Shown here one piece after another: positions 24,901 to 46,373 of a stretch of DNA of 64,000 nt (its first letter is position 1; each line of letters starts with the position of its first letter). The notes below the pieces were generated by a model. That model was not told the origin of the DNA. It did no database searches and saw nothing but the letters and a program-made list of their open reading frames with translations. Origin of the DNA: Lytechinus pictus (lineage: Eukaryota); contig NC_087250.1 in assembly GCF_037042905.1 (NCBI RefSeq), forward strand, positions 6,076,001-6,140,000, read 5' to 3'. The position numbers and the translations under genes are program-made.

Positions 24901-27900
24901 ATATATAGGCCAATCTCAAATTTGCGTTACTGTCTTTGCGTTATATATCATGTTATCATGATTGTAATATACATAATGTACAGTGTAGGGAGATATAGTT
25001 GTGTTATTCACGACTGTTTACATATATGAACTAAAGCTTTCATTTTATTGGAATAATTGAAAACCAGCCTCCTTTGTTTTTACTACATATAGGCCAATCT
25101 CAAGTTTGCGTTACTGTCTTTGCGTGATATAGCATGTTATCATGATTGTAATATATATAATGTAGGGAGATGTAATTGTGTTATTCACGACTGTTTACAT
25201 ATATCCCAACTAAAGCTTTCATTTCATTGGAATAATTGGAAACCAGCCTCCTTTGTTTTTACTATATGTAGGCCAATCTCAAGTTTGCGTTAGTCTCTTT
25301 GCGTTATATAGCATGCTATCATGATTGTAATATATATATAATGTAGGCAGATATAATTGTGTTATTCATGACTGTTTACATATATCAACTAAAGCTTTCA
25401 TTTCATTGGAATAATTCGAAACCAGCCTCCTTTGTTTTGACTATATATAGGCCAATCTCAAGTTTGCGTTAGTCTCTTTGCGTTATATAGCATGCTATCA
25501 TGATTGTAATATATATAATGTAGGCAGATATAGTTGTGTTATTCACGACTGTTTACATATATGAACTAAAGCTTTCATTTTATTGGAATAATTGAAAACC
25601 AGCCTCCTTTGTTTTGACTATATATAGGCCAATCTCAAGTTTGCGTTAGTCTCTTTGCGTTATATAGCATGCTATCATGATTGTAATATATATATAATGT
25701 AGGCAGATATAATTGTGTTATTCATGACTGTTTACATATATCAACTAAAGCTTTCATTTCATTGGAATAATTCGAAACCAGCCTCCTTTGTTTTGACTAT
25801 ATATAGGCCAATCTCAAGTTTGCGTTAGTCTCTTTGCGTTATATAGCATGCTATCATGATTGTAATATATATAATGTAGGCAGATATAGTTGTGTTATTC
25901 ACGACTGTTTACATATATGAACTAAAGCTTTCATTTCATTGGAATAATTGAAAACCAGCCTCCTTTGTTTTGACTATATATAGGCCAATCTCAAGTTTGC
26001 GTTAGTCTCTTTGCGTTATATAGCATGCTATCATGATTGTAATATATATATAATGTAGGCAGATATAATTGTGTTATTCATGACTGTTTACATATATCAA
26101 CTAAAGCTTTCATTTCATTGGAATAATTGAAAACAAGCCTCCTTTGTTTTTACTATATATAGGCCAATCTCAAGTTTGCGTTACTGTCTTTGCGTTATAT
26201 AGCATGTTATCATGATTGTAATGAATATAATGTAAGGAGATATAATTGTGATATTCACGACTGTTTACATATATCCCAACTAAAACTTTCATTTCATTGG
26301 AATAATTGGAAACCAGCCTCCTTTGTTTTTACTATATATAGGCCAATCTCAAGTTTGCGTTACTGTCTTTGCGTGATATAGCATGTTATCATGATTGTAA
26401 TATATATAATGTAGGGAGATGTAATTGTGTTATTCACGACTGTTTACATATATCCCAACTAAAGCTTTCATTTCATTGGAATAATTGGAAACCAGCCTCC
26501 TTTGTTTTTACTATATATAGGCCAATCTCAAGTTTGCGTTACTGTATTTGCGTTATATAGCATGCTATCATGATTGTAATATATATAATGTAGGGAGATA
26601 TAATTGTGTTATTCACGACTGTTTACATATATCCCAACTAAGGCTTTCATTTCGTTGGAATAATTGGAAACCAGCCTCCTTTGTTTTTACTATATATAGG
26701 CCAATCTCAAATTTGCGTTACTGTCTTTGCGTTATATATCATGTTATCATGATTGTAATATACATAATGTACAGTGTAGGGAGATATAGTTGTGTTATTC
26801 ACGACTGTTTACATATATGAACTAAAGCTTTCATTTTATTGGAATAATTGAAAACCAGCCTCCTTTGTTTTGACTATATATAGGCCAATCTCAAGTTTGC
26901 GTTAGTCTCTTTGCGTTATATAGCATGCTATCATGATTGTAATATATATATAATGTAGGCAGATATAATTGTGTTATTCATGACTGTTTACATATATCAA
27001 CTAAAGCTTTCATTTCATTGGAATAATTGGAAACCAGCCTCCTTTGTTTTTACTATATGTAGGCCAATCTCAAGTTTGCGTTAGTCTCTTTGCGTTATAT
27101 AGCATGCTATCATGATTGTAATATACATAATGTAGGCAGATATAGTTGTGTTATTCACGACTGTTTACATATATGAACTAAAGCTTTCATTTCATTGGAA
27201 TAATTGAAAACCAGCCTCCTTTGTTTTGACTATATATAGGCCAATCTCAAGTTTGCGTTATTCTCTTTGCGTTATATAGCATGCTATTATGATTGTAATA
27301 TATATAATGTAGGCAGATATAGTTGTGTTATTCACGACTGTTTACATATATGAACTAAAGCTTTCATTTCATTGGAATAATTGAAAACCAGCCTCCTTTG
27401 TTTTGACTATATATAGGCCAATCTCAAGTTTGCGTTACTGTCTTTGCGTGATATAGCATGTTATCATGATTGTAATATATATAATGTAGGGAGATGTAAT
27501 TGTGTTATTCACGACTGTTTACATATATCCCAACTAAAGCTATCATTTCATTGGAATAATTGGAAACCAGCCTCCTTTGTTTTTACTATATATAGGCCAA
27601 TCTCAAGTTTGCTTTACTGTATTTGCGTTATATAGCATGCTATCATGATTGTAATATATATAATGTAGGGAGATATAATTGTGTTATTCACGACTGTTTA
27701 CATATATCCCAACTAAAGCTTTCATTTCATTGGAATAATTGGAAACCAGCCTCCTTTGTTTTTACTATATATAGGCCAATCTCAAATTTCCGTTACTGTC
27801 TTTGCGTTATATATCATGTTATCATGATTGTAATATACATAATGTACAGTGTAGGGAGATATAGTTGTGTTATTCACGACTGTTTACATATATGAACTAA

Positions 27901-30900
27901 AGCTTTCATTTTATTGGAATAATTGAAAACCAGCCTCCTTTGTTTTTACTACATATAGGCCAATCTCAAGTTTGCGTTACTGTCTTTGCGTGATATAGCA
28001 TGTTATCATGATTGTAATATATATAATGTAGGGAGATGTAATTGTGTTATTCACGACTGTTTACATATATCCCAACTAAAGCTTTCATTTCATTGGAATA
28101 ATTGGAAACCAGCCTCCTTTGTTTTTACTATATGTAGGCCAATCTCAAGTTTGCGTTAGTCTCTTTGCGTTATATAGCATGCTATCATGATTGTAATATA
28201 TATATAATGTAGGCAGATATAATTGTGTTATTCATGACTGTTTACATATATCAACTAAAGCTTTCATTTCATTGGAATAATTCGAAACCAGCCTCCTTTG
28301 TTTTGACTATATATAGGCCAATCTCAAGTTTGCGTTAGTCTCTTTGCGTTATATAGCATGCTATCATGATTGTAATATATATAATGTAGGCAGATATAGT
28401 TGTGTTATTCACGACTGTTTACATATATGAACTAAAGCTTTCATTTTATTGGAATAATTGAAAACCAGCCTCCTTTGTTTTGACTATATATAGGCCAATC
28501 TCAAGTTTGCGTTAGTCTCTTTGCGTTATATAGCATGCTATCATGATTGTAATATATATATAATGTAGGCAGATATAATTGTGTTATTCATGACTGTTTA
28601 CATATATCAACTAAAGCTTTCATTTCATTGGAATAATTCGAAACCAGCCTCCTTTGTTTTGACTATATATAGGCCAATCTCAAGTTTGCGTTAGTCTCTT
28701 TGCGTTATATAGCATGCTATCATGATTGTAATATATATAATGTAGGCAGATATAGTTGTGTTATTCACGACTGTTTACATATATGAACTAAAGCTTTCAT
28801 TTCATTGGAATAATTGAAAACCAGCCTCCTTTGTTTTGACTATATATAGGCCAATCTCAAGTTTGCGTTAGTCTCTTTGCGTTATATAGCATGCTATCAT
28901 GATTGTAATATATATATAATGTAGGCAGATATAATTGTGTTATTCATGACTGTTTACATATATCAACTAAAGCTTTCATTTCATTGGAATAATTGAAAAC
29001 AAGCCTCCTTTGTTTTTACTATATATAGGCCAATCTCAAGTTTGCGTTACTGTCTTTGCGTTATATAGCATGTTATCATGATTGTAATGAATATAATGTA
29101 AGGAGATATAATTGTGATATTCACGACTGTTTACATATATCCCAACTAAAACTTTCATTTCATTGGAATAATTGGAAACCAGCCTCCTTTGTTTTTACTA
29201 TATATAGGCCAATCTCAAGTTTGCGTTACTGTCTTTGCGTGATATAGCATGTTATCATGATTGTAATATATATAATGTAGGGAGATGTAATTGTGTTATT
29301 CACGACTGTTTACATATATCCCAACTAAAGCTTTCATTTCATTGGAATAATTGGAAACCAGCCTCCTTTGTTTTTACTATATATAGGCCAATCTCAAGTT
29401 TGCGTTACTGTATTTGCGTTATATAGCATGCTATCATGATTGTAATATATATAATGTAGGGAGATATAATTGTGTTATTCACGACTGTTTACATATATCC
29501 CAACTAAGGCTTTCATTTCGTTGGAATAATTGGAAACCAGCCTCCTTTGTTTTTACTATATATAGGCCAATCTCAAATTTGCGTTACTGTCTTTGCGTTA
29601 TATATCATGTTATCATGATTGTAATATACATAATGTACAGTGTAGGGAGATATAGTTGTGTTATTCACGACTGTTTACATATATGAACTAAAGCTTTCAT
29701 TTTATTGGAATAATTGAAAACCAGCCTCCTTTGTTTTGACTATATATAGGCCAATCTCAAGTTTGCGTTAGTCTCTTTGCGTTATATAGCATGCTATCAT
29801 GATTGTAATATATATATAATGTAGGCAGATATAATTGTGTTATTCATGACTGTTTACATATATCAACTAAAGCTTTCATTTCATTGGAATAATTGGAAAC
29901 CAGCCTCCTTTGTTTTTACTATATGTAGGCCAATCTCAAGTTTGCGTTAGTCTCTTTGCGTTATATAGCATGCTATCATGATTGTAATATACATAATGTA
30001 GGCAGATATAGTTGTGTTATTCACGACTGTTTACATATATGAACTAAAGCTTTCATTTCATTGGAATAATTGAAAACCAGCCTCCTTTGTTTTGACTATA
30101 TATAGGCCAATCTCAAGTTTGCGTTATTCTCTTTGCGTTATATAGCATGCTATTATGATTGTAATATATATAATGTAGGCAGATATAGTTGTGTTATTCA
30201 CGACTGTTTACATATATGAACTAAAGCTTTCATTTCATTGGAATAATTGAAAACCAGCCTCCTTTGTTTTGACTATATATAGGCCAATCTCAAGTTTGCG
30301 TTACTGTCTTTGCGTGATATAGCATGTTATCATGATTGTAATATATATAATGTAGGGAGATGTAATTGTGTTATTCACGACTGTTTACATATATCCCAAC
30401 TAAAGCTATCATTTCATTGGAATAATTGGAAACCAGCCTCCTTTGTTTTTACTATATATAGGCCAATCTCAAGTTTGCTTTACTGTATTTGCGTTATATA
30501 GCATGCTATCATGATTGTAATATATATAATGTAGGGAGATATAATTGTGTTATTCACGACTGTTTACATATATCCCAACTAAAGCTTTCATTTCATTGGA
30601 ATAATTGGAAACCAGCCTCCTTTGTTTTTACTATATATAGGCCAATCTCAAATTTCCGTTACTGTCTTTGCGTTATATATCATGTTATCATGATTGTAAT
30701 ATACATAATGTACAGTGTAGGGAGATATAGTTGTGTTATTCACGACTGTTTACATATATGAACTAAAGCTTTCATTTTATTGGAATAATTGAAAACCAGC
30801 CTCCTTTGTTTTTACTACATATAGGCCAATCTCAAGTTTGCGTTACTGTCTTTGCGTGATATAGCATGTTATCATGATTGTAATATATATAATGTAGGGA

Positions 30901-33280
30901 GATGTAATTGTGTTATTCACGACTGTTTACATATATCCCAACTAAAGCTTTCATTTCATTGGAATAATTGGAAACCAGCCTCCTTTGTTTTTACTATATG
31001 TAGGCCAATCTCAAGTTTGCGTTAGTCTCTTTGCGTTATATAGCATGCTATCATGATTGTAATATATATATAATGTAGGCAGATATAATTGTGTTATTCA
31101 TGACTGTTTACATATATCAACTAAAGCTTTCATTTCATTGGAATAATTCGAAACCAGCCTCCTTTGTTTTGACTATATATAGGCCAATCTCAAGTTTGCG
31201 TTAGTCTCTTTGCGTTATATAGCATGCTATCATGATTGTAATATATATAATGTAGGCAGATATAGTTGTGTTATTCACGACTGTTTACATATATGAACTA
31301 AAGCTTTCATTTTATTGGAATAATTGAAAACCAGCCTCCTTTGTTTTGACTATATATAGGCCAATCTCAAGTTTGCGTTAGTCTCTTTGCGTTATATAGC
31401 ATGCTATCATGATTGTAATATATATATAATGTAGGCAGATATAATTGTGTTATTCATGACTGTTTACATATATCAACTAAAGCTTTCATTTCATTGGAAT
31501 AATTCGAAACCAGCCTCCTTTGTTTTGACTATATATAGGCCAATCTCAAGTTTGCGTTAGTCTCTTTGCGTTATATAGCATGCTATCATGATTGTAATAT
31601 ATATAATGTAGGCAGATATAGTTGTGTTATTCACGACTGTTTACATATATGAACTAAAGCTTTCATTTCATTGGAATAATTGAAAACCAGCCTCCTTTGT
31701 TTTGACTATATATAGGCCAATCTCAAGTTTGCGTTAGTCTCTTTGCGTTATATAGCATGCTATCATGATTGTAATATATATATAATGTAGGCAGATATAA
31801 TTGTGTTATTCATGACTGTTTACATATATCAACTAAAGCTTTCATTTCATTGGAATAATTGAAAACAAGCCTCCTTTGTTTTTACTATATATAGGCCAAT
31901 CTCAAGTTTGCGTTACTGTCTTTGCGTTATATAGCATGTTATCATGATTGTAATGAATATAATGTAAGGAGATATAATTGTGATATTCACGACTGTTTAC
32001 ATATATCCCAACTAAAACTTTCATTTCATTGGAATAATTGGAAACCAGCCTCCTTTGTTTTTACTATATATAGGCCAATCTCAAGTTTGCGTTACTGTCT
32101 TTGCGTGATATAGCATGTTATCATGATTGTAATATATATAATGTAGGGAGATGTAATTGTGTTATTCACGACTGTTTACATATATCCCAACTAAAGCTTT
32201 CATTTCATTGGAATAATTGGAAACCAGCCTCCTTTGTTTTTACTATATATAGGCCAATCTCAAGTTTGCGTTACTGTATTTGCGTTATATAGCATGCTAT
32301 CATGATTATAATATATATAATGTAGGGAGATATAATTGTGTTATTCACGACTGTTTACATATATCCCAACTAAAGCTTTCATTTCGTTGGAATAATTGGA
32401 AACCAGCCTCCTTTGTTTTTACTATATATAGGCCAATCTCAAATTTGCGTTACTGTCTTTGCGTTATATATCATGTTATCATGATTGTAATATACATAAT
32501 GTACAGTGTAGGGAGATATAGTTGTGTTATTCACGACTGTTTACATATATGAACTAAAGCTTTCATTTCATTGGAATAATTGAAAACCAGCCTCCTTTGT
32601 TTTGACTATATATAGGCCAATCTCAAGTTTGCGTTAGTCTCTTTGCGTTATATAGCATGCTATCATGATTGTAATATATATATAATGTAGGCAGATATAA
32701 TTGTGTTATTCATGACTGTTTACATATATCAACTAAAGCTTTCATTTCATTGGAATAATTCGAAACCAGCCTCCTTTGTTTTTACTATATATAGGCCAAT
32801 CTCAAGTTTGCGTTAGTCTCTTTGCGTTATATAGCATGCTATCATGATTGTAATATATATAATGTAGGCAGATATAGTTGTGTTATTCACGACTGTTTAC
32901 ATATATGAACTAAAGCTTTCATTTCATTGGAATAATTGAAAACCAGCCTCCTTTGTTTTGACTATATATGGGCCAATCTCAAGTTTGCGTTAGTCTCTTT
33001 GCGTTATATAGCATGCTATCATGATTGTAATATATATATAATGTAGGCAGATATAATTGTGTTATTCATGACTGTTTACATATATCAACTAAAGCTTTCA
33101 TTTCATTGGAATAATTGAAAACAAGCCTCCTTTGTTTTTACTATATATAGGCCAATCTCAAGTTTGCGTTACTGTCTTTGCGTTATATAGCATGCTATCA
33201 TGATTGTAATATATATATAATGTAGGCAGATATAATTGTGTTATCCATGACTGCTTACAAAATAATGAACTAAAGCTTGA
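18950..33280 (+). repeat. 179-bp satellite DNA array (about 80 monomers, 14.3 kb) with higher-order repeat structure
   Basis: Monomer aaaccagcctcctttgtttttactatatataggccaatctcaagtttgcg...aactaaagctttcatttcattggaataattg repeats head-to-tail every 177-186 bp; identical spurious ORFs recur at 179-bp and 2866-bp intervals. Confidence 0.98.
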
Positions 33281-35388: not shown

Positions 35389-35665
35389 TATATTAAATAT
35401 TATACAGATATTGCCTATCTAGAGTTTGAATATAACATTTCCTCTCCCAGACGGAGTTATATTTTTCCCAAGAGATAATATTTTGCCCGAAGCGCGCAGC
35501 GCTGAGGGAAAATATTATCCCGAGGGAAAAATATAGCTTCGGAGGGGAGTTGAAATGTTATTTATTAAAACGATAGACCAGGCAATAGAGAATAATGACG
35601 GCGATATGGCCATTCTAAAGGTTCACTCAAGCGTGACGCGCGCACAAAAGAATATGACGTAATAC

Positions 35666-36020
35666 ATTAGCATAACAATGAAGGGTTGAATAGGGGAAAT
35701 TAGCATAACAATGGAAGAGTTGAATAGGGATAATTAGCATAACAATGGATGAATAGTCGGGAAAGATGGCCATTGAATAGGGCGTTGATTAGCATAACAA
35801 TGGAAGAGTAGTCTGGAAGGATGGCCATTGAATAGGGATCATTAGCATAACAATAGCGAGTGCGGAAAGATCGGATGGCCATTGAATAGGGGTTGATTAG
35901 CATAACAATAGCGAGTGCGGAAAGATCGGATGGCCATTGAATAGGGGTTGATTAGCATAACAATGCCGAGTGCGGAAAGATCGGATGGCCATTGAATAGG
36001 GGATCATTTAAATAACAATA
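35666..36020 (-). promoter_or_regulatory. Subterminal minisatellite (33-55 bp units) carrying 7 Sox-Oct composite-like motifs (C/T)ATTGTTATGCTAAT, left end
   Basis: ATTAGCATAACAAT at 35666, 35699, 35733, 35788, 35841, 35896, 35951. Confidence 0.65.
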
Positions 36021-36250
36021 ATCGCAGTGACGTAGTAATGTTATGTATCTGTTAGAAGGGACGCGTAGTCTCCTTGGCAACGAATGAACAACCATAAAGT
36101 TGAATGGAAGGATTAAAAGAGTGTTATTGTTAGAGTAGATTTTGGGTAATATAATAGCACTGGGAAAAAAGGGCAGGAGTGTCAAAGTTTGACTTACCCT
36201 TTTAATATTTCCATTCGAGCGTCGATCGTCCAAAATATTGTCCATATTAA

Positions 36251-39200
36251 CCCTTTGCGTGCGACGGGCTTCCACAGAAGCCCAGCGAGTCGTTCACTTA
36301 GCTACGACGGGCTTCTACAGAAGCCGAGATTTGTTTGGTTTAATTCGATGAAGTTTTTCAGCTTTTTCGTAATTGTTATGTACTAAAACTTTTCCCACCA
36401 TTTCCTTTATAAACCTATTTCAATAATCAAATGAAAAAAATATACAGCTACGTGGAGAAAAATCCCCAAAATAGGAAATCATTTCAACTTTACCCGAATT
36501 TTTCGTTGGAGTCAAACGGGAAGGATAAATTTTGTGACGTGCACGTACGCGCGCGCACACTAGGCCTGATCACGTGATTTATTTTGATCACGTGATTTGA
36601 TCCATATCGTTGTTCTGAAAGATAAGCTGAAATCTTTTCTGGAAGATCGTCGCGTAATAACCTACGCGTTTATTCACCATTTTCGTCTTATTTGTTTCAT
36701 CAAGAAGATATTACTCTAGATAGAATGATATCTCCTTGGTTTCATCGATCGATTGTATTTTCAGAAAAACAAAAAGCTTGTAATGTATTTTTAGAACTTT
36801 GAGCTGATCGCGGTGCGCTTATGAACTTTTTCCCTCCCCATCATCCCTCTTCTCATTATTTTTCTCTACTATTCTAAAAAAAAGAAGAGAAAAGAAAGCA
36901 GTTTAGCACACCATTTATCTTATGCTCTTTTCAAAAGGGAAACGTCCATGTAGTTCATGATATCGGCACTACCCAAAACAAAAGAATGTCTGGGCGGCAA
37001 CTCAAACGAATTCCTTCCGAAAAGAGCAGGATACAGATGGTCAACGCCCCGAACAAAAGGAAGATTAGCGTTTATCGGCAAGATTACCTATTGAATGCTC
37101 TTCGTACTTAGCAATACAAAAAGTTTTTATGAATACTTTTTTCCGACCAACATACCTTATCTAAAAAAAAGAAAAAAAATGTCTCAATTACCAACAAAAC
37201 AGGTGCTTATGACATCGGTCAGTGATTCATTTTGCATAAAAGCGCTTCCCTGGGTGATGATGCATATGAGGATGAAAGAAGAATCATTTAGGGAAATTAT
37301 AGATTATAGAAAAAAAATGTTCAGATGTCACGGAGAACGAGAGAAAATTAGAGAGGGAGAGATAAAAGGGGGAATAGACAAGTGCTCTTTTGCTAACATT
37401 CCATAATATCTACTTAAACGAATAATAACATGACTTTCTTTTTTTTTTGTTATATTACTTTAAAAAAAGTCCCAAAACGTTTGTTTGTCGCAACTCGGTC
37501 CTCAGACCCTTGTCAAACTGATGACTTTGTATTATTATTCTTGTTTGACCTAGCCCCCCTTCCCGATGGAAATGTTCTGACCTACACTGTCATATTGCTC
37601 GTTTGTCTCCTCTCTCCTATGTTCTGTTTTAATTGCTATAGTAACACGGTGGAAAATATAATAATAAAGACCGTCCTGTCCAGTTTTTTCCCCCGTTACG
37701 ACCAAAAGAAAATAATTTTAAAAAATCGCATTGGGGCGCTTCCCATTGTTAGCATCCAAACCAAAATATTTGGAAAAAGATTTATGCTATTCAGGGACAG
37801 CAATGTATTTGTTTATGGTCCAGGGTTTGTGCTGTGGGCCGGGGGTGAATCGGCTAAAAAAATCAAATTGTTTTAATTCATGTCATTTTACAGAATGAAT
37901 TTATTATAGGATAGGTTTTAGATGCTCTTTATCTTATTTTTATTTTTTCTCTCCCAGATAATTATTTTTTGCATTGAAAAGTTGACGGAAACATAATCAA
38001 TTAAAATGATAAAACCAATAATGAACTAGAAGTTTTCTCGTCTGAAATGGAGGAAATATATATGATGAGAAATTACGTTAAGGCTCCCACTATAAAGAAA
38101 ACACTGGCGTGTCTGGGGTGTCACCCGACAGAACTCTCTCAATCCTACAAACTTTTATTCACGTGCGACCTACACTCCCCCCAAGGGTTGATACCGACCC
38201 CAATTGTATTGATTTTCCTACTTTTTCGCGAATTTCTATTTTTTTACCGGCGAATAGCGTGGTAGAAAAGATTCATATAGAAAAAAAAATATGTTTCCGT
38301 TACTGCAAACATTTTGGGCACTAATCCTGGTTAGCTTCAAAACCAAAATATCTGATTTTTAAAATAAAAAACAGGGGCCGCTGAGCGTTTTGATAATGGA
38401 GGGGTTGAGCTGAATGTGGGAGGGAGTGGACTGGCCAAAAAATCACAAATTTATACAGTCTTCGGATTTGTTGTATGTTTGCTGAAAGGGGTGAGGACTG
38501 AAACTTCCTACCAACTCCGCAGCCTTTGGACTATTAGATAGAACAATTAAAACGATAAAGACAAAAATGAATTCTAACTATTAGGAATGTTTTTTTTTTA
38601 TAATTTATTTATTACTTTGTTTTCGGTTGTAAAATCAAGGAGACAAATTAAAAATAGAACAAAACGAAAGAACAAATAAAAAAAAATGCTTTAGATTGCG
38701 GATGTTATAATCAATTCAAGAAAAAATAAAATGTAAAAAAAATGTAAAATGACAGGTACTGAGAAGAAAAATTAGAGAGACAGGATTGAGGGTGGTGGGG
38801 GCGGGTATATACCTCGTAATCCAGATCGGGGAGAAGGAAGACGATACAGATATAATTTAAATGATAAGAACTCAGAGAAAAAAGGATGTTGAACGGAGGG
38901 GATATATAAAGACGATAGATATAAGACAAGGGAATGAAAGCGGTAAAAAATACATAGTTACAGGTGAGAAACCAAAGAAAGGGAAAACGAAGAAATCCCT
39001 AATTGGTACCGTTTTATAATTAGATTGACAAACGTGCAATAATTTTAAAAAAATACCATCAGCCAATCAAATAGAAGGATTTCAGTAGCTTTTTAAAATG
39101 GGCCCCTTGTACACTTTTGAACCCCTCCCCCCCCCCGCTTTCTCTCGCTCTCTTATTGCTCTTTTTTTCTTCTATTTCAAAGGAAATAAACAGAAAATAA

Positions 39201-40575
39201 AGCAATTTAGAACGCCGTTTATCCTCTGCTCTTTTGAAAGTGAAAACGTCCACGCAGTTCTTGATCTCGGCACTCCCCAAACAAAAGAAAATCATGGCGG
39301 ACGCTCAAACGAATTCCTTATAAAAAAAGCAGGAGACAAATAGCAAACGCCCTGAATAAAAGGAAGATTAGTGTATTTCGTCAAGATGACATACTGAATG
39401 TTTTTCATATTTAGCAATACAAAAAGCTCTTAGGAATACTGCTTTTCATATTACGACAGTAAAATTAAAAAAGTAAATGTTTACTCACAAAATATTGCCA
39501 AAACATGCAGGCGCTTAAGACATGGTAAGAACATTTTCTTCTTGAGCACGACAATGCTTTCTTCATTAACAAAAACCCAGAACGGTTAAAAAATGAATAA
39601 AATGAAAGAGCAAAATAACGCACTTTTAATTTAGATGCTACAATTTCAATAGATATATAGAATAAATATAGAAATAATTTACTTTCTCTCATTGTGACGA
39701 ACAGTAATCGGTAGCATGGTTATTTTTGGAGGGAAAAAGGAGATAGAAAAAATGAAACGTAGAACGAGACGAGGAGAGCGTTGGGGGTATGATTTCAGAT
39801 CCACTATTCGAGTCACATTTATCCCCTTCACTCTTTGAGATTGCAACAGGAAATCAGATCGAATACTGGTATGCAATCTTCAGGAACAAAATTATTTTTA
39901 TTACAAGCAATAATTCATGAATAGAAGAAACCAAAGGCGATTTTTAGTGAAACATTGAGGCCACCGTCTTGAAGCCCAGAAGTCTCAAATTAGTTTCGGA
40001 CTTTCGTTGCGCAGCATCATCATTGTACTTGCAAAGGAACATTTACCATTTTTTATTCATTCTGGAAAATAAAGGTATTTGGTATGCTGTGATTTCACAA
40101 AAAAAGGATTATCGTCGTAATTATACACTTTGCAAATGATCTCTCTACAAGGAGGTAAAGAGATCATTCATGAGTAGCGTGACAATATAATAGGCAATGA
40201 AAAAAGCACTAGAGCAGACAACAAAGCGGTATCGATCGAACCCGACCTGTCCGCGTGTGCTGATTGCCCTTACGCATTTTTGTACACAGTGCCTATTGAC
40301 TTGGGGAAAAGCGAAGATTTTACAAAATAACACGACTTTTTCCTCGTAAATTTCTCAACTATTCTGTTGATTTGAGAAGCAAAACCTTTATTTCTAGAAA
40401 GAAAAATGTCTGATCTTTCATCTTTGCATTTACTAAAAATCCTGAAAATACATCAGTTTGGCGCAATTAGCAATTGATTCGGAAAACACCGCCACAGATC
40501 CAAATACCAGCAATGTACCAAAACGGCTCCGCCGCAGGGAGAGGTATCGGGATTCGCGGGCCCGCACGCAAAGGG
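36251..40575. mobile_element. Non-autonomous piggyBac-type element (4325 bp)
   Basis: TTAA|CCCTTTGCGTGCG ... CGCACGCAAAGGG|TTAA; the mirror arm holds the empty site (gacaatgTTAAtatggac, 45105-45108); no transposase ORF visible. Confidence 0.92.
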
Positions 40576-40696
40576 TTAACATTGTCATAATATTCAAAAC
40601 CTAGTTTCCCATGTCCATATATTACAGTGAAACATATTTACAATGAAGATTAAGTGATGCCATTATACATATATACAACTCATATTCTATGGAAAA

Positions 40697-41140
40697 TTAA
40701 TCGATTTCATCTATAGGTAAGATCCCGTTTATGGTTCCTTTGTATAGAATTTTCGACGCTGTGTATCCTTTTTTGAACCAGCATGGATGTTTGTAGAATG
40801 AGAAGGAGGCTGCTGGAATCTTCGTGCTTGCAATGTGATTGAGATAGACATCGATGAATAATTTATTATTACAAAATCGTTGAAGAATTCGTCTCTTCCA
40901 CCCTTTAGACCAATCTTCTTTCAACTCGTGAGGCATGCCGTGCCTGTGTAAGAGTTCGAATTTCTCTTGGTCTGAAATAGTTTCGTAGTGATTGGAGATG
41001 AGACACCCTGGTATCGCTACGCAACGATTTTCTATCGACGCCATCCCTGGAACACAATCCTTCTCAAACCTGTCCAGCGTGTCTTTGTGATCTCCCCAAA
41101 TTAATTCCTTTGCAACTCCTTGATTTTCCATCGCTTCCAT
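40697..41140 (-). CDS. 147-aa hypothetical protein of the Polinton-like element (left-arm copy)
   Basis: ATG-initiated intronless ORF with upstream TATA-like and two CCAAT motifs; differs from the right copy by one residue (H/Q). Confidence 0.6.
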   Translation of the reverse strand: MEAMENQGVAKELIWGDHKDTLDRFEKDCVPGMASIENRCVAIPGCLISNHYETISDQEKFELLHRHGMPHELKEDWSKGWKRRILQRFCNNKLFIDVYLNHIASTKIPAASFSFYKHPCWFKKGYTASKILYKGTINGILPIDEID

Positions 41141-41998
41141 CGATTTTTCCTCTTAATTTTGGATCTTCCCCCATACTCTTCTCCCTCTATCATCTATATT
41201 ATAATAGATGAAAGAAAACGAACCATTCAAGATGTCATGGTCGAAAACAACCTTTGATTTTCTAACAAAGCGAGGAATGCATGAACTAATCTTTGTATCT
41301 TCACTCCAATCGGTTATTTTGGTAAACGGTAGAAAGCAAACTACTTAACGATGTCTTGGTCGAAAAAACTTTTGATTTTTCGAACAAAGCGAGGAATGTT
41401 AGAAACTAATCTTTGCATCTCCGCTCCAATCAGTTCTTTCATACTTCCATAGTTTTCATTTTGACCCACATACACGTCTCTCTTTATTGGCTTTCTGACT
41501 CACACAAATTGTATTACATAGATGGCACTAGCTTCAGGTCAACTCCATTCACGCACATGGTGATAACATAGAACACTGTACAATTATATGTTATTATTAT
41601 TCATTTTTATTCCATTTTAAGTCCAGACATATACACAAAGAAGATTTTGATACAAAGGTAAAAGTAATCGAAGTACGTATTGTGTAGACAAAATAATTGT
41701 TAACTGTTATATCTTCGCTGTAACACAATCCATGTATAGGCCTATGGCTGGTATGAATATTGACGATAGAAATAATAGAGTTCAATCTGTCATTTTTGTT
41801 GACGGCGTTTTCAAGTTCTTTGATTATTTTTGTTGACAAGGTGGTGTTGTGCCTTTAGTTGTAGACTCCATCCTCACTCTCTGTTTCTTCATCATCGTCG
41901 TCATCGTCACCTCCATCTTGGAACTGGAATAAACCATCAAATTGTGGACCATGCCTGGCTAAGACTCTTTGTACGGCTTTCTGGAATTCCATGCCATT

Positions 41999-42532
41999 TT
42001 ATAGTCTTTCCTTGAGATCAGAAACGATCTCGTGATTGACGTCAGCTTCTCCTAGGCTAATGTTTTGCTGCAAGAACTTGGAGTAAAGATCGAAAAAGAT
42101 GCGTTTGACGGCCCACAGTAATTTCACGTGCGCTTTTTCTTTAGCGTCTTCTTCTTCCATTCCCTCTGAAATATATTTCTGATATTTTTCGTCTCTCAGG
42201 TCCTTGGTGGCTGTCATGGCCTGCTCCAACCATACTTGGTAAGCAAGGTTGTCTTCAATTTCATCCATGTTATCTGTCTCTGACATTGACGATTCATCCT
42301 CTCCATCGTTTTCTGAATCACTAGATTCTTCAACTCCCTCCGTTTGAGAGGGTGGTTCGGAGTAATCATCCTCACTTGTACCTACTTCAGCGTCGGAAGA
42401 TTCAATTTTGCCTTCATCTTCTGTATCAGGGTGAGCTTTTTGTTCATGCCTCTGCATATCAAACTTCCGACTATAGGTCCTATTGCATTGGGAACATGCG
42501 TAACGCCGGTTGGACATATCAAGAGCGTTCAT
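41999..42532 (-). CDS. C2H2 zinc-finger, acidic protein (left-arm copy); frame continues past TAA to 41855
   Basis: YACSQCNRTYSRKFDMQRHEQKAH is a canonical C2H2 finger, followed by a D/E/S-rich tract and a helical region. Confidence 0.75.
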   Translation of the reverse strand: MNALDMSNRRYACSQCNRTYSRKFDMQRHEQKAHPDTEDEGKIESSDAEVGTSEDDYSEPPSQTEGVEESSDSENDGEDESSMSETDNMDEIEDNLAYQVWLEQAMTATKDLRDEKYQKYISEGMEEEDAKEKAHVKLLWAVKRIFFDLYSKFLQQNISLGEADVNHEIVSDLKERL

Positions 42533-42609
42533 GTTGACTCGATGCTGTTTAGGTCAGAATTGAAGCAAAGTGTTATCAATCGTATCTTTATACATGATGT
42601 CAACATCCA

Positions 42610-43075
42610 TAAACGAATCCGTAGATCCGTAATGGAATCCGTATATCCGCTAAACGAATCCGTAATTCCGTTCAACGATTCCGTATAAATCCGCTAAACG
42701 AATCCGTAGATCCGTAAACGAATCCGTAAATTCACTAAACGAATCCCAAGATCCGTAAAAGGATTCGAACTTCTTTGAATCATATTGATAGAATTGACAA
42801 AGTTTAATCTGTTTTAAATCAAGGAACAACCAATGACTTTGATATTGGAGTACATATTTTATTACTACCAATGGTTTAAAGAGTTATACAGACCTCATGG
42901 AGGAATTTATGACAATACTGATGATTCGCAATATTTGGGATTCGTTTAGTGGATTTACGGATTCGTTTACGGATCTACGGATTCGTTTAGCGGATTTATA
43001 CGGAATCGTTGAACGGAATTACGGATTCGTTTAACGGATCTACGGATTCCATTACGGATCTACGGATTCGTTTAT
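42610..43075. repeat. Central (G)AATCCGT/GATCCGT short-repeat blocks in inverted orientation around the unique spacer 42750-42934
   Basis: More than 12 copies of atccg/ttccg-type units per side. Confidence 0.85.
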
Positions 43076-43151
43076 GGATGTTGACATCATGTATAAAGAT
43101 ACGATTGATAACACTTTGCTTCAATTCTGACCTAAACAGCATCGAGTCAAC

Positions 43152-43685
43152 ATGAACGCTCTTGATATGTCCAACCGGCGTTACGCATGTTCCCAATGCA
43201 ATAGGACCTATAGTCGGAAGTTTGATATGCAGAGGCATGAACAAAAAGCTCACCCTGATACAGAAGATGAAGGCAAAATTGAATCTTCCGACGCTGAAGT
43301 AGGTACAAGTGAGGATGATTACTCCGAACCACCCTCTCAAACGGAGGGAGTTGAAGAATCTAGTGATTCAGAAAACGATGGAGAGGATGAATCGTCAATG
43401 TCAGAGACAGATAACATGGATGAAATTGAAGACAACCTTGCTTACCAAGTATGGTTGGAGCAGGCCATGACAGCCACCAAGGACCTGAGAGACGAAAAAT
43501 ATCAGAAATATATTTCAGAGGGAATGGAAGAAGAAGACGCTAAAGAAAAAGCGCACGTGAAATTACTGTGGGCCGTCAAACGCATCTTTTTCGATCTTTA
43601 CTCCAAGTTCTTGCAGCAAAACATTAGCCTAGGAGAAGCTGACGTCAATCACGAGATCGTTTCTGATCTCAAGGAAAGACTATAA
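43152..43685 (+). CDS. C2H2 zinc-finger, acidic protein (right-arm copy); frame continues past TAA to 43829 (225 codons)
   Basis: Same translation as the left copy; TATAAA at about 43092; AATAAA at about 44073. Confidence 0.75.
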   Translation: MNALDMSNRRYACSQCNRTYSRKFDMQRHEQKAHPDTEDEGKIESSDAEVGTSEDDYSEPPSQTEGVEESSDSENDGEDESSMSETDNMDEIEDNLAYQVWLEQAMTATKDLRDEKYQKYISEGMEEEDAKEKAHVKLLWAVKRIFFDLYSKFLQQNISLGEADVNHEIVSDLKERL

Positions 43686-44249
43686 AATGGCATGGAATTC
43701 CAGAAAGCCGTACAAAGAGTCTTAGCCAGGCATGGTCCACAATTTGATGGTTTATTCCAGTTCCAAGATGGAGGTGACGATGACGACGATGATGAAGAAA
43801 CAGAGAGTGAGGATGGAGTCTACAACTAAAGGCACAACACCACCTTGTCAACAAAAATAATCAAAGAACTTGAAAACGCCGTCAACAAAAATGACAGATT
43901 GAACTCTATTATTTCTATCGTCAATATTCATACCAGCCATAGGCCTATACATGGATTGTGTTACAGCGAAGATATAACAGTTAACAATTATTTTGTCTAC
44001 ACAATACGTACTTCGATTACTTTTACCTTTGTATCAAAATCTTCTTTGTGTATATGTCTGGACTTAAAATGGAATAAAAATGAATAATAATAACATATAA
44101 TTGTACAGTGTTCTATGTTATCACCATGTGCGTGAATGGAGTTGACCTGAAGCTAGTGCCATCTATGTAATACAATTTGTGTGAGTCAGAAAGCCAATAA
44201 AGAGAGACGTGTATGTGGGTCAAAATGAAAACTATGGAAGTATGAAAGA

Positions 44250-44460
44250 ACTGATTGGAGCGGAGATGCAAAGATTAGTTTCTAACATTCCTCGCTTTGT
44301 TCGAAAAATCAAAAGTTTTTTCGACCAAGACATCGTTAAGTAGTTTGCTTTCTACCGTTTACCAAAATAACCGATTGGAGTGAAGATACAAAGATTAGTT
44401 CATGCATTCCTCGCTTTGTTAGAAAATCAAAGGTTGTTTTCGACCATGACATCTTGAATG
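44250..44460 (+). promoter_or_regulatory. Duplicated 120-bp unit with ATTGG (CCAAT) boxes upstream of the 147-aa ORF (mirror at 41224-41434)
   Basis: gattggag..agat.caaagattagtt...cattcctcgctttgtt...ttttcgacca.gacatc at 44253 and 44373; tattataata at about 44478. Confidence 0.5.
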
Positions 44461-44543
44461 GTTCGTTTTCTTTCATCTATTATAATATAGATGATAGAGG
44501 GAGAAGAGTATGGGGGAAGATCCAAAATTAAGAGGAAAAATCG

Positions 44544-44987
44544 ATGGAAGCGATGGAAAATCAAGGAGTTGCAAAGGAATTAATTTGGGGAGATCACAAA
44601 GACACGCTGGACAGGTTTGAGAAGGATTGTGTTCCAGGGATGGCGTCGATAGAAAATCGTTGCGTAGCGATACCAGGGTGTCTCATCTCCAATCACTACG
44701 AAACTATTTCAGACCAAGAGAAATTCGAACTCTTACACAGGCACGGCATGCCTCACGAGTTGAAAGAAGATTGGTCTAAAGGGTGGAAGAGACGAATTCT
44801 TCAACGATTTTGTAATAATAAATTATTCATCGATGTCTATCTCAATCACATTGCAAGCACGAAGATTCCAGCAGCCTCCTTCTCATTCTACAAACAGCCA
44901 TGCTGGTTCAAAAAAGGATACACAGCGTCGAAAATTCTATACAAAGGAACCATAAACGGGATCTTACCTATAGATGAAATCGATTAA
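44544..44987 (+). CDS. 147-aa hypothetical protein of the Polinton-like element (right-arm copy)
   Basis: Intronless ORF MEAMENQG...ILPIDEID*. Confidence 0.6.
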   Translation: MEAMENQGVAKELIWGDHKDTLDRFEKDCVPGMASIENRCVAIPGCLISNHYETISDQEKFELLHRHGMPHELKEDWSKGWKRRILQRFCNNKLFIDVYLNHIASTKIPAASFSFYKQPCWFKKGYTASKILYKGTINGILPIDEID

Positions 44988-45334
44988 TTTTCCATAGAAT
45001 ATGAGTTGTATATATGTATAATTGCATCACTTAATCTTCATTGTAAATATGTTTCACTGTAATATATGGACATGGGAAACTAGGTTTTGAATATTATGAC
45101 AATGTTAATATGGACAATATTTTGGACGATCGACGCTCGAATGGAAATATTAAAAGGGTAAGTCAAACTTTGACACTCCTGCCCTTTTTTCCCAGTGCTA
45201 TTATATTACCCAAAATCTACTCTAACAATAACACTCTTTTAATCCTTCCATTCAACTTTATGGTTGTTCATTCGTTGCCAAGGAGACTACGCGTCCCTTC
45301 TAACAGATACATAACATTACTACGTCACTGCGAT

Positions 45335-45689
45335 TATTGTTATTTAAATGATCCCCTATTCAATGGCCATCCGATCTTTCCGCACTCGGTATTGTTATGC
45401 TAATCAACCCCTATTCAATGGCCATCCGATCTTTCCGCACTCGCTATTGTTATGCTAATCAACCCCTATTCAATGGCCATCCGATCTTTCCGCACTCGCT
45501 ATTGTTATGCTAATGATCCCTATTCAATGGCCATCCTTCCAGACTACTCTTCCATTGTTATGCTAATCAACGCCCTATTCAATGGCCATCTTTCCCGACT
45601 ATTCATCCATTGTTATGCTAATTATCCCTATTCAACTCTTCCATTGTTATGCTAATTTCCCCTATTCAACCCTTCATTGTTATGCTAAT
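45335..45689 (+). promoter_or_regulatory. Subterminal minisatellite with 7 Sox-Oct composite-like motifs, right end
   Basis: (C/T)ATTGTTATGCTAAT seven times, interleaved with CCCTATTCAA(TGG). Confidence 0.65.
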
Positions 45690-46373
45690 GTATTACGTCA
45701 TATTCTTTTGTGCGCGCGTCACGCTTGAGTGAACCTTTAGAATGGCCATATCGCCGTCATTATTCTCTGGCAATATCTGTTATATTATATAGTCTATTTT
45801 GATTCGCCATCATAAATTGCATTCATCATCTGGCTCAAACCCGAAATTCTTGCTACAGCTCTGATCCATCTACGTCATAATATATGTTTTTTTAATACAT
45901 CAAGCGCGTTCTTCATGCAATCGACGCGTTAACATTAGCGCGTACATTAAATAAACTACCTTGTTACGCAACTTGTATGCAGCGAGTGACGTCACCTTAG
46001 TGAATATAACGCCGCAATTGAAAATACAACGCAGTATAGGCCCTGAGGTGACGTCAAAACCTAGAATATAACAAATGCGATCCTCGCAGCTATGGTCACG
46101 TGATGGCGTATTGACCTATCACTGATTCGAATCTACATAACCTATGTAATATATTAGAATATTAGAATATAATATAGAATAGGCTTAGGAACATAATTAG
46201 GTAATCAAATAATTGAATGTGAAGTTCCTGGTTTCCCCAATGCTTAAAAAACGACACGATCAAAGCCGACTCAAGACCGAACAAAGGAATGAATGATTAC
46301 ATAAATGACATATTTTGTCATTGTGCAAGAAATTATAATTATGTTACCACCCATACATGCTTTAAAATCGATT

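What the first reader, a model, noticed from the sequence alone, without database searches (positions are those of the whole stretch)
35666..35965. Seven tandem Sox-Oct composite motifs at each end of the Polinton-like element
Seen: the subterminal minisatellite varies in unit length (33-55 bp) but always keeps (C/T)ATTGTTATGCTAAT. There are 7 copies per end (mirror about 45390-45689), interleaved with CCATTGAATAG (HMG-box-like) and next to TGACG CRE half-sites. Known: C(A/T)TTGTNATGCAAAT with no spacer is the canonical Sox2-POU composite element, ATGCTAAT is an octamer variant, and adenovirus ITRs use host Oct-1 to stimulate protein-primed replication. Inference: the ends recruit host SoxB and POU factors, tying replication or transcription to oocyte, early-embryo or stem cells. 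They could also spread such enhancers through the genome.
Basis: partly seen in the sequence, partly recalled or inferred. Interest (0 to 1): 0.82.

Follow-up and report, generated by a model that had tools for sequence, protein, structure and literature searches.

The report
Sox/Oct site arrays in transposon ends
Both ends of a 10-kb mobile element in a sea-urchin genome carry seven perfect copies of the textbook Sox/POU composite binding site, so the element probably uses the host's egg and early-embryo transcription factors, but binding is untested and the element has no Polinton genes of its own.

Summary
The string YATTGTTATGCTAAT occurs seven times at 35666-35965 and seven times mirrored at 45390-45689, against 1.3 expected by chance. 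Units are 33-55 bp long. The 15-mer is letter for letter the zero-spacer canonical Sox/Oct element used in PMC5314778.

The arrays lie in the 665-bp terminal inverted repeats of an element at 35587-45768. It has a 6-bp target duplication (GGCAAT) and AGAGAA//TTCTCT ends, which are Maverick/Polinton hallmarks. It has no polymerase, integrase or capsid gene. It is a non-autonomous, almost perfectly palindromic element with two copies of a small C2H2-finger gene, and a piggyBac-like element is nested in its left arm.

A 96-99% identical copy in Lytechinus pictus keeps the five outer 15-mers per end. There, inner units that have lost the octamer half have multiplied. More distant relatives with the same gene have different end arrays (ETS-like, CRE and direct TGACC repeats), or keep only the Sox-like half.

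Within units, all variation falls outside two protected blocks: the 14-mer, and CCCTATTCAATGGCCATC. A diverged copy of the second block also sits near the terminus.

Best reading: each unit pairs an element-specific site with a host Sox/POU site.

The parts
35587..45768 (.). Whole mobile element, 10,182 bp including a nested insertion. Non-autonomous, Maverick/Polinton-type by its ends, and almost perfectly palindromic.
   Evidence: Inverted repeats. Ends AGAGAA//TTCTCT. A 96-99% identical copy with its own target duplication in L. pictus. No core genes.
35581..35586 (.). Left copy of the 6-bp target-site duplication GGCAAT.
   Evidence: Read. The same six bases follow the right end.
45769..45774 (.). 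Right copy of the 6-bp target-site duplication GGCAAT.
   Evidence: Read.
35587..36251 (+). Left terminal inverted repeat, 665 bp.
   Evidence: It has 1 mismatch to the right arm.
45104..45768 (-). Right terminal inverted repeat, 665 bp.
35587..35665 (+). Terminal 79 bp without any 15-mer. It holds three TGACG, one ATGGCCAT, and a diverged copy (13 of 17 bases) of the second unit block. Mirror at 45690-45768.
   Evidence: Identical in all four arms of the window and L005 copies.
35666..36020 (-). Left subterminal array. Seven units carry the exact Sox/Oct 15-mer (35666-35965), and one inner variant unit (36006-36020) has lost the octamer half.
45335..45689 (+). Right subterminal array, the mirror of the left one. 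One variant unit (45335-45349) and seven exact 15-mers (45390-45689).
36251..40575 (.). Nested piggyBac-like non-coding element. Its ends are CCCTTTGCG...CGCAAAGGG, flanked by TTAA at 36247-36250 and 40576-40579. It interrupts the left arm of the palindrome.
   Evidence: The uninterrupted site is seen in L005 near 11950.
40576..42749 (-). Left inner palindrome arm, 2,174 bp.
   Evidence: It has 5 mismatches to the right arm.
42750..42934 (.). Unique 185-bp centre of the palindrome.
42935..45108 (+). Right inner palindrome arm, 2,174 bp. It abuts the right terminal repeat.
   Evidence: It is 98-99% identical to L005 9603-12428.
42610..43079 (.). Two mirrored arrays of ATCCGTA-containing repeats of about 21 bp, upstream of the two gene copies. 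There are 15 copies in the element and 1 elsewhere in the window.
   Evidence: The same motif forms 10-bp arrays in L002 and arrays in L005.
43152..43829 (+). Gene for a small protein with one C2H2 finger, an acidic disordered stretch and a six-helix C-terminal domain. It is broken by one in-frame stop, with no frameshift.
   Evidence: The intact 225-aa homologue P0151 of L. pictus is 99% identical over the aligned part.
41855..42532 (-). Mirror copy of the same gene, with the same single in-frame stop.
44544..44987 (+). Open reading frame of 147 codons, coding status doubtful. Mirror at 40697-41140 on the minus strand.
   Evidence: No homologue. No family match. Intact in L005, but with many amino-acid changes in the 93% copy.

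Best explanation
**What it is (shown).** The arrays are the subterminal part of the terminal inverted repeats of a non-autonomous, palindromic Maverick/Polinton-type element of a Lytechinus sea urchin.

**How each unit is built.** Each unit is bipartite:
- One block is CCCTATTCAA, extended to CCCTATTCAATGGCCATC in the long units. A diverged copy of it sits about 20 bp from the very end. I infer that this is the element-specific site, read by proteins of a helper element or of the element itself.
- The other block is a perfect zero-spacer Sox/POU composite site. It occurs only in the subterminal array. I infer that host SoxB-type and POU (Oct1/2-type) factors read it, helped by neighbouring TGACG (bZIP-type) sites.

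**How it most likely works (inferred).** Seven such sites per end form a homotypic cluster. It would act as an enhancer or chromatin opener where these factors are abundant, that is in the egg and early embryo. This would drive the element's outward-facing C2H2 gene and keep the ends accessible when a new insertion can reach the germ line.

**Shown versus inferred.** The motif identity, the array anatomy, the element's ends, the pattern of variation and the relatives are shown. Factor binding, timing and effect are inferred.
For: - **Motif identity.** The 15-mer equals the canonical forward-forward zero-spacer Sox/Oct element printed in PMC5314778.
- **Enrichment.** There are 14 hits of that paper's search string in the repeats and 1 elsewhere, against 2.9 expected. 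In the fetched loci the string occurs only in the repeats of the sister copy L005.
- **Protected blocks.** Among the three long unit types, 19 of 56 columns vary. All lie outside two invariant runs of 18 and 14 bases. None of 200,000 random placements gives two such runs. The 2-5 nt linker between the blocks differs in almost every unit, and even between the two copies.
- **Position.** The 15-mer is absent from the terminal 79 bp, whereas the ATGGCCAT-containing block recurs there. This fits different readers for the two blocks.
- **TGACG.** It is about eight-fold enriched in the repeat. SoxB1, bZIP and Oct factors together activate nodal early in sea-urchin embryos (PMC6160229).
- **Relatives.** The L002 element has the same gene but fills its end repeats with other recognisable motifs: CCGGAAGT (4 against 0.35 expected), TGACGTCA (8 against 0.3) and TGACCTTTGACC (17 against 0). 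The ETS and CRE identities are from PMC3464117. This suggests that the ends of this group are built from factor sites.
- **Precedents.** ERV long terminal repeats carry pluripotency-factor sites (PMC5379053). Adenoviral terminal repeats embed host NF-I and NF-III/Oct-1 sites (PMC6410123).
Against: - There are no binding, accessibility or expression data.
- The octamer half is dispensable for array growth. Units in which it is changed number 5 of 10 in the left arm and 2 of 7 in the right arm of L005, and 1 of 8 per arm here.
- A relative at 63% protein identity (L006) keeps only CCTATTCA plus a Sox-like TGTTATG, joined to a CRE. L002 has no Sox/Oct site at all.
- The second block is at least as conserved and has no known reader.
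- Only two close copies could be compared. They are too similar (96-99%) for a between-copy conservation test.
- Invariance inside an array can also come from recent duplication and conversion.
- The copy in the window has a broken gene, so its own arrays may no longer matter.
Confidence: 0.45

Rival explanations
1. Both conserved blocks, the 15-mer included, are recognition sites for element-encoded proteins: the integrase or replication proteins of an unseen autonomous partner, or the element's own C2H2 protein. This would be like the subterminal repeats of many DNA transposons. The likeness to a Sox/Oct site would be incidental.
For: - Subterminal repeats in terminal inverted repeats are classic transposase-binding arrays (own knowledge).
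- Two blocks are protected, not just one.
- CCTATTCA plus TGTTATG persist in the distant relative L006, while the octamer tail does not.
- The element encodes a conserved finger protein of unknown function.
Against: - An exact 15-of-15 match to an optimal composite site is very unlikely by accident. A 14-mer is expected about once in 2.7e8 positions.
- The 15-mer is missing from the terminal 79 bp, where an end-recognition protein should bind.
- One C2H2 finger reads only about 3 bp (own knowledge).
- L002 elements with an 82% identical gene have quite different arrays.
Confidence: 0.22
2. Host Sox and POU factors do bind, but their role is that of auxiliary origin factors for protein-primed replication from the ends, as NF-I and NF-III/Oct-1 act in adenoviral terminal repeats. 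Their role would not be transcriptional.
For: - The ends are Maverick-type, and that group is thought to replicate by protein priming.
- The adenoviral precedent (PMC6410123).
- The sites are close to the termini, starting at base 80.
- The palindromic build resembles snap-back defective genomes that keep only origins (own knowledge).
Against: - No polymerase or terminal protein gene is present here or in any relative seen.
- Protein-primed replication has not been demonstrated for these elements.
- The precedent has one site per factor, not seven.
- The arrays lie downstream of an outward-facing gene, which suits an enhancer.
Confidence: 0.15
3. The array is a neutral minisatellite inside the repeat. 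The invariance reflects recent unit duplication and arm-to-arm conversion, and the motif has no function.
For: - Unit number changes freely: 8 and 8 here, 10 and 7 in L005.
- A variant lacking the octamer has multiplied.
- The arms are nearly identical (1 and 5 mismatches), which shows homogenisation or youth.
- Distant relatives lack the motif.
Against: - Variation among unit types is strongly clustered outside two blocks. Simple duplication does not predict this.
- The linker between the blocks is hypervariable, while the 14 and 18 bases on either side never change.
- The block equals an optimal known composite site.
Confidence: 0.12

Closest known systems
Canonical Sox2/Oct4 (Sox/POU) composite enhancer element of vertebrates
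   Same: The half-sites, order, orientation and zero spacing are identical. The window's 15-mer is the very string used as the ideal forward-forward element in PMC5314778.
   Different: Here it sits in an echinoderm, in 7+7 tandem copies inside transposon terminal repeats, and is paired with a second conserved block. Cooperative binding by echinoid factors is untested.
Maverick/Polinton virus-like elements
   Same: A 6-bp target duplication in three independent insertions. Long terminal inverted repeats. End motifs AGAGAA//TTCTCT, and exact (AGT)2//(ACT)2 in the relative L002, as described in PMC8097293.
   Different: No protein-primed polymerase, integrase, capsid, ATPase or protease gene. 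The element is about 5.9 kb without the nested insertion, instead of 15-20 kb. It is palindromic and carries only a small C2H2 gene.
Adenoviral inverted terminal repeats with host NF-I and NF-III/Oct-1 sites
   Same: Host transcription-factor sites, including an octamer-binding POU factor site, are embedded in terminal repeats next to a terminal core (PMC6410123).
   Different: The adenoviral repeats have single sites within about 50 bp of the end and a demonstrated role in replication. Here there are arrays of composite Sox/POU sites from base 80 to about 430, with no replication genes and no data.
Endogenous-retrovirus long terminal repeats that carry pluripotency-factor sites (for example mouse RLTR9 subfamilies)
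   Same: Mobile-element terminal repeats bring clusters of Sox2, Oct4 and partner sites that work as modules in early embryonic cells (PMC5379053).
   Different: Those are retroelements of mammals with one module per repeat. This is a DNA element of Maverick type in a sea urchin with a homotypic tandem array.
Subterminal repeat arrays of cut-and-paste DNA transposons and Foldback-type elements (own knowledge)
   Same: Terminal inverted repeats are made largely of short tandem units of variable length. The overall build is palindromic.
   Different: Those arrays repeat the transposase-binding motif that also sits at the tip, and their target duplications have other lengths. Here the 15-mer is absent from the tip and the duplication is 6 bp.

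Membership tests
Canonical Sox/Oct composite element | Sox half-site of CATTGT(C/T) type | tested here: met
   All 14 copies read C/T-ATTGTT. They fit HWTTGW of PMC5314778.
Canonical Sox/Oct composite element | Octamer ATGCTAAT directly abutting the Sox half-site, same orientation, zero spacer | tested here: met
   Exact in all 14 copies. It is the string given as FF0 in PMC5314778.
Canonical Sox/Oct composite element | Cooperative binding of a Sox and a POU protein, and occupancy in cells | not testable with these tools
   No binding or occupancy data can be reached here.
Maverick/Polinton | 6-bp target-site duplication | tested here: met
   GGCAAT in the window, GTAGTA in L005, AAAGCA in L002. 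The criterion is from PMC8097293.
Maverick/Polinton | Terminal inverted repeats of hundreds of bp with AG-type end motifs | tested here: met
   665-bp repeats. The ends AGAGAA//TTCTCT match 5 of 6 bases of (AG)3. L002 has exact (AGT)2//(ACT)2.
Maverick/Polinton | Protein-primed family-B DNA polymerase gene | tested here: not met
   No open reading frame above 177 codons in the element. Pfam finds only a C2H2 finger. None in the related loci.
Maverick/Polinton | Retroviral-type integrase, capsid proteins, packaging ATPase and protease genes | tested here: not met
   Same searches. The element can be at most a non-autonomous derivative.
Maverick/Polinton | An autonomous partner sharing the same ends | not testable with these tools
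   The host genome cannot be searched by DNA here. Scans of viral and metagenome collections found nothing.
piggyBac (nested insertion 36251-40575) | TTAA target duplication and CCC...GGG termini | tested here: met
   The empty site is seen in L005.
piggyBac (nested insertion 36251-40575) | Transposase gene | tested here: not met
   No long open reading frame. Two of its longer frames gave no Pfam match.

The most novel reading that the evidence does not exclude
The window holds a member of an undescribed group of palindromic, snap-back-like satellites of Maverick/Polinton elements in echinoids. They keep only the helper's end signals, a conserved gene for a C2H2-acidic-helical protein behind an ATCCGTA-repeat promoter, and end arrays. 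The end arrays are interchangeable cassettes of host transcription-factor sites: Sox/POU plus bZIP in one lineage, and ETS, CRE and direct TGACC repeats in another. Swapping cassettes would retune the developmental window in which the element is active.
Probability: 0.25. Interest if true: 0.75.

Novelty: new variant of a known kind. Interest (0 to 1): 0.55.

Why it matters
Mobile elements that carry ready-made binding sites for early-embryo factors are well known for mammalian retroelements. They are hardly documented for DNA elements of the Maverick/Polinton type or for echinoderms.

If the arrays are bound by SoxB1 and Oct1/2, three things would follow:
- A virus-like DNA element ties itself to the egg and cleavage-stage regulatory state, the stage that gives access to the germ line.
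- The Sox/POU partnership on the zero-spacer element is used outside vertebrates.
- There is a natural source of strong, portable Sox/POU enhancer clusters in a classic developmental model.

The palindromic, gene-poor build also bears on how non-autonomous derivatives of such elements arise.

Tried and rejected
**Searches that found nothing**
- Exact look-ups of ten open reading frames of the element in the protein collection.
- A homology search with the 147-codon frame.
- A homology search with a frame lying inside the array, meant to fish out other arrays.
- Two viral-contig scans, one for a motif pair and one for the C2H2 protein.
- One metagenome scan for motif plus second block, which gave a single chance hit in a bacterial-looking contig, L007.

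**Relatives that could not be read**
- Four contigs carrying relatives of the gene could be listed but not read, because the sample files are too large.
- One relative (P0003) was not on record.

**The C2H2 protein**
- It matched nothing beyond its finger in solved structures.
- It gave only one weak match, below significance, in phage families.
- Its confident six-helix domain had no significant fold match in the PDB or BFVD libraries.

**Ideas rejected**
- That the internal 4.3 kb holds decayed Polinton genes: it is a nested piggyBac-like element.
- That the 5 kb inside the L005 copy holds helper genes: it is a non-LTR retrotransposon fragment.
- That the perfect palindrome is an assembly artefact: relatives from other assemblies are palindromic too.
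- That CCATTGAATAG is a second HMG site: the invariant core lacks the CATTGA part in the short units.

Full report
**1. The observation**

The region 35666-35965 holds seven exact copies of C/T-ATTGTTATGCTAAT on the minus strand. The mirror region 45390-45689 holds seven on the plus strand. There is no other exact copy in the 64 kb. With two mismatches allowed, 15 matches are found against 1.28 expected, and no shuffle reaches 15.

Start-to-start spacings are 33, 34, 55, 53, 55 and 55 bp. CCATTGAATAG is present five times per end, and the two short outer units lack its first bases. TGACG occurs four times per repeat arm, about eight times the density of the rest of the window. An eighth, inner unit per arm has the octamer half changed.

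**2. What the 15-mer is**

The exact string occurs in one paper of the library, the Coop-seq study of Sox/POU pairing. There it is the idealised forward-forward zero-spacer ('canonical') Sox/Oct element used for modelling. The same paper gives CATTGTC/ATGCTAAT as the canonical composite.

That paper's own search string for canonical sites hits the window 15 times. Fourteen hits are these copies, and 2.9 hits are expected. In about 50 kb of related loci the string hits only the end repeats of the sister element. A chance match of an array core to an optimal 14-15-base composite site is very unlikely.

**3. What carries it**

- **Inverted repeats.** The arrays lie in 665-bp terminal inverted repeats, 35587-36251 and 45104-45768, with one mismatch between them.
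- **Ends.** The element is flanked by GGCAAT on both sides and ends in AGAGAA//TTCTCT.
- **Inner palindrome.** Inside is a second, 2,174-bp inverted repeat, 40576-42749 and 42935-45108, with five mismatches, around a 185-bp centre.
- **Nested insertion.** The 4.3 kb between the left terminal repeat and the left inner arm has CCC...GGG ends and TTAA on both sides. It is a piggyBac-type insertion. The uninterrupted site is seen in a sister copy. The host element is therefore an almost perfect palindrome of about 5.9 kb.
- **Genes.** It has no long reading frame. Pfam finds only one C2H2 finger.

**4. The gene**

Each arm carries, facing outward, a gene (43152-43829 and 41855-42532) for a protein family of about 210-250 residues. 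The family has 54 clusters below 1e-10. Its members have one C2H2 finger, an acidic disordered stretch and a conserved C-terminal domain.

The intact Lytechinus pictus protein LOC135157287 (P0151) is 99% identical to the window's copy over the aligned part. Each of the two window copies has one in-frame stop and no frameshift.

An AlphaFold model puts six confident helices at residues 96-202. Neither sequence nor fold matches anything known beyond the finger.

Upstream of each copy lie arrays of ATCCGTA-containing repeats: 15 in the element and one elsewhere in the window.

**5. Host and relatives**

The accession GCA_037042905.1 is Lytechinus pictus (PMC11082199; names).

- **L005.** On CM073242.1 this locus holds an element (3884-12561) that is 96-99% identical to the window's end repeats and gene arm. 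It has its own 6-bp duplication, GTAGTA. The window is thus from L. pictus or a very close relative. L005 also holds a third, 93% identical copy with a broken gene, whose end repeat is cut by another insertion.
- **L002.** On CM073244.1 this locus holds a more distant element. Only the gene (82% DNA identity) and the central repeats are shared. It has the duplication AAAGCA, ends AGTAGT//ACTACT, a palindromic build and quite different end arrays.
- **L006.** This metagenome contig carries a protein 63% identical. It is palindromic at its centre, ends in ACTACT and has three degenerate units that join CCTATTCA to a Sox-like TGTTATG and a CRE.

PMC8097293 describes a 6-bp duplication with (AG)3//(CT)3 or (AGT)2//(ACT)2 ends as the signature of Mavericks. 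The ends therefore fit that group, and the gene content does not. No polymerase, integrase or capsid gene is seen in the window or in any relative. I file it as a non-autonomous element of Maverick/Polinton type, not as a Polinton.

**6. Is the 15-mer conserved more than its surroundings?**

Across the four arms of the two close copies there are 33 units, of 14 distinct sequences.

- **What never changes.** TGTTAT and AAT inside the 15-mer, and the ten bases CCCTATTCAA.
- **What changes inside the 15-mer.** Positions 10-12 have two states. One gives the octamer and the other destroys it.

| Arm | Canonical units | Variant units (octamer lost) |
|---|---|---|
| Window, left | 7 | 1 |
| Window, right | 7 | 1 |
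| L005, left | 5 | 5 |
| L005, right | 5 | 2 |

- **Outer part.** The five outer units and the terminal 79 bp are the same in all four arms.
- **Clustering of variation.** Among the three long unit types of the window, 19 of 56 columns vary. All lie outside two invariant runs of 18 and 14 bases, and random placement never reproduces this. The 2-5 nt linker between the runs differs in nearly every unit.

So the motif is protected, but so is a second block, and the octamer half can be lost without stopping unit amplification. The two copies are too alike for a between-copy test. In the more distant relatives the full motif is not conserved.

**7. Mechanism**

A diverged copy of the second block (ATGGCCATT..., 13 of 17 bases) lies about 20 bp from the tip, whereas the 15-mer never occurs in the terminal 79 bp. 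I therefore read each unit as bipartite: an element-specific site plus a host Sox/POU site.

Three further points bear on this:
- The TGACG sites next to the arrays recall the early sea-urchin nodal enhancer, which uses SoxB1, bZIP and Oct factors (PMC6160229).
- The L002 relative fills its ends with CCGGAAGT, TGACGTCA and TGACCTTTGACC, all far above chance. The ETS and CRE identities are from PMC3464117. The nuclear-receptor reading of the TGACC repeats rests on my own knowledge and is only a lead.
- Both kinds of precedent exist. ERV repeats carry pluripotency-factor modules (PMC5379053), and adenoviral terminal repeats carry host NF-I and NF-III/Oct-1 sites (PMC6410123).

I consider an enhancer or chromatin-opening role in egg and early embryo most likely (0.45). 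The rivals are:
- sites for element-encoded proteins (0.22);
- auxiliary replication-origin sites (0.15);
- a neutral minisatellite (0.12).

Nothing beyond sequence supports binding.

**8. Verdict**

The finding is a new variant of a known kind: a mobile element carrying host-factor sites. It also carries a possibly undescribed element family. Interest is 0.55.

**9. Slip**

My early tool calls and notes 1 and 2 give the bounds of the reading frame that ends at the premature stop of the C2H2 gene, and so reveal its place indirectly. I have deleted nothing, and this report does not repeat it.

Noticed in passing
window 36251-40575: A nested, non-coding piggyBac-type element of 4.3 kb. It has TTAA on both sides and CCCTTTGCG...CGCAAAGGG ends, and sits inside the left arm of the palindromic element. 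The empty site is visible in the sister copy, L005 near 11950.
   Followed up: yes
window 42610-43079; L002 9275-9912; L005 9786-9928; L006 390-488: Arrays of short repeats sit just upstream of the C2H2 gene in every relative. They contain ATCCGTA/TTACGGAT here and in both L. pictus loci, and ACGGCGT in L006. Unlike the end arrays they are conserved across lineages. They are candidate promoter or autoregulatory sites.
   Followed up: partly
window 40576-45108; L002 7200-11778; L006 1-410: Three of the four lineages seen are palindromes around a short unique centre. This looks like an inverted duplication of one end of a longer parent, reminiscent of snap-back defective genomes. The arms here differ at only 5 of 2,174 bases and share the same gene break.
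   Followed up: partly
L002 6638-7200 and 12430-12779: The end repeats of the distant relative are packed with TGACCTTTGACC, CCGGAAGT, TGACGTCA and a unit of about 32 bp containing GCCATCTTAATTGGATAATGA. Two extra internal copies of the end module also occur, at 8930-9275 and 11771-12104.
   Followed up: partly
window 18950-33278: A 14.3-kb satellite of about 80 copies of a 179-bp unit, 93% alike, lies 2.3 kb to the left of the element.
   Followed up: no
window 2508-2885 and 8576-8950: Open reading frames with a Death domain (E 1.4e-05) and a ZU5 domain (E 7.5e-12). They are probably exons of host immune-type genes.
   Followed up: partly
L005 4592-8708: A fragment of a non-LTR retrotransposon (endonuclease and reverse transcriptase) lies inside the sister copy. 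It is bounded by a 61-bp direct repeat of inner end-repeat sequence.
   Followed up: partly
protein P0171: An L. pictus gene model named 'replication factor C subunit 3-like' contains a 96% identical piece of the C2H2 protein. This suggests that a family copy has been drawn into a host gene model.
   Followed up: no
window 44544-44987 and 40697-41140: A 147-codon frame is kept open in the window and in L005. It has no homologue anywhere and many amino-acid changes in the 93% copy, so its coding status is unclear.
   Followed up: partly
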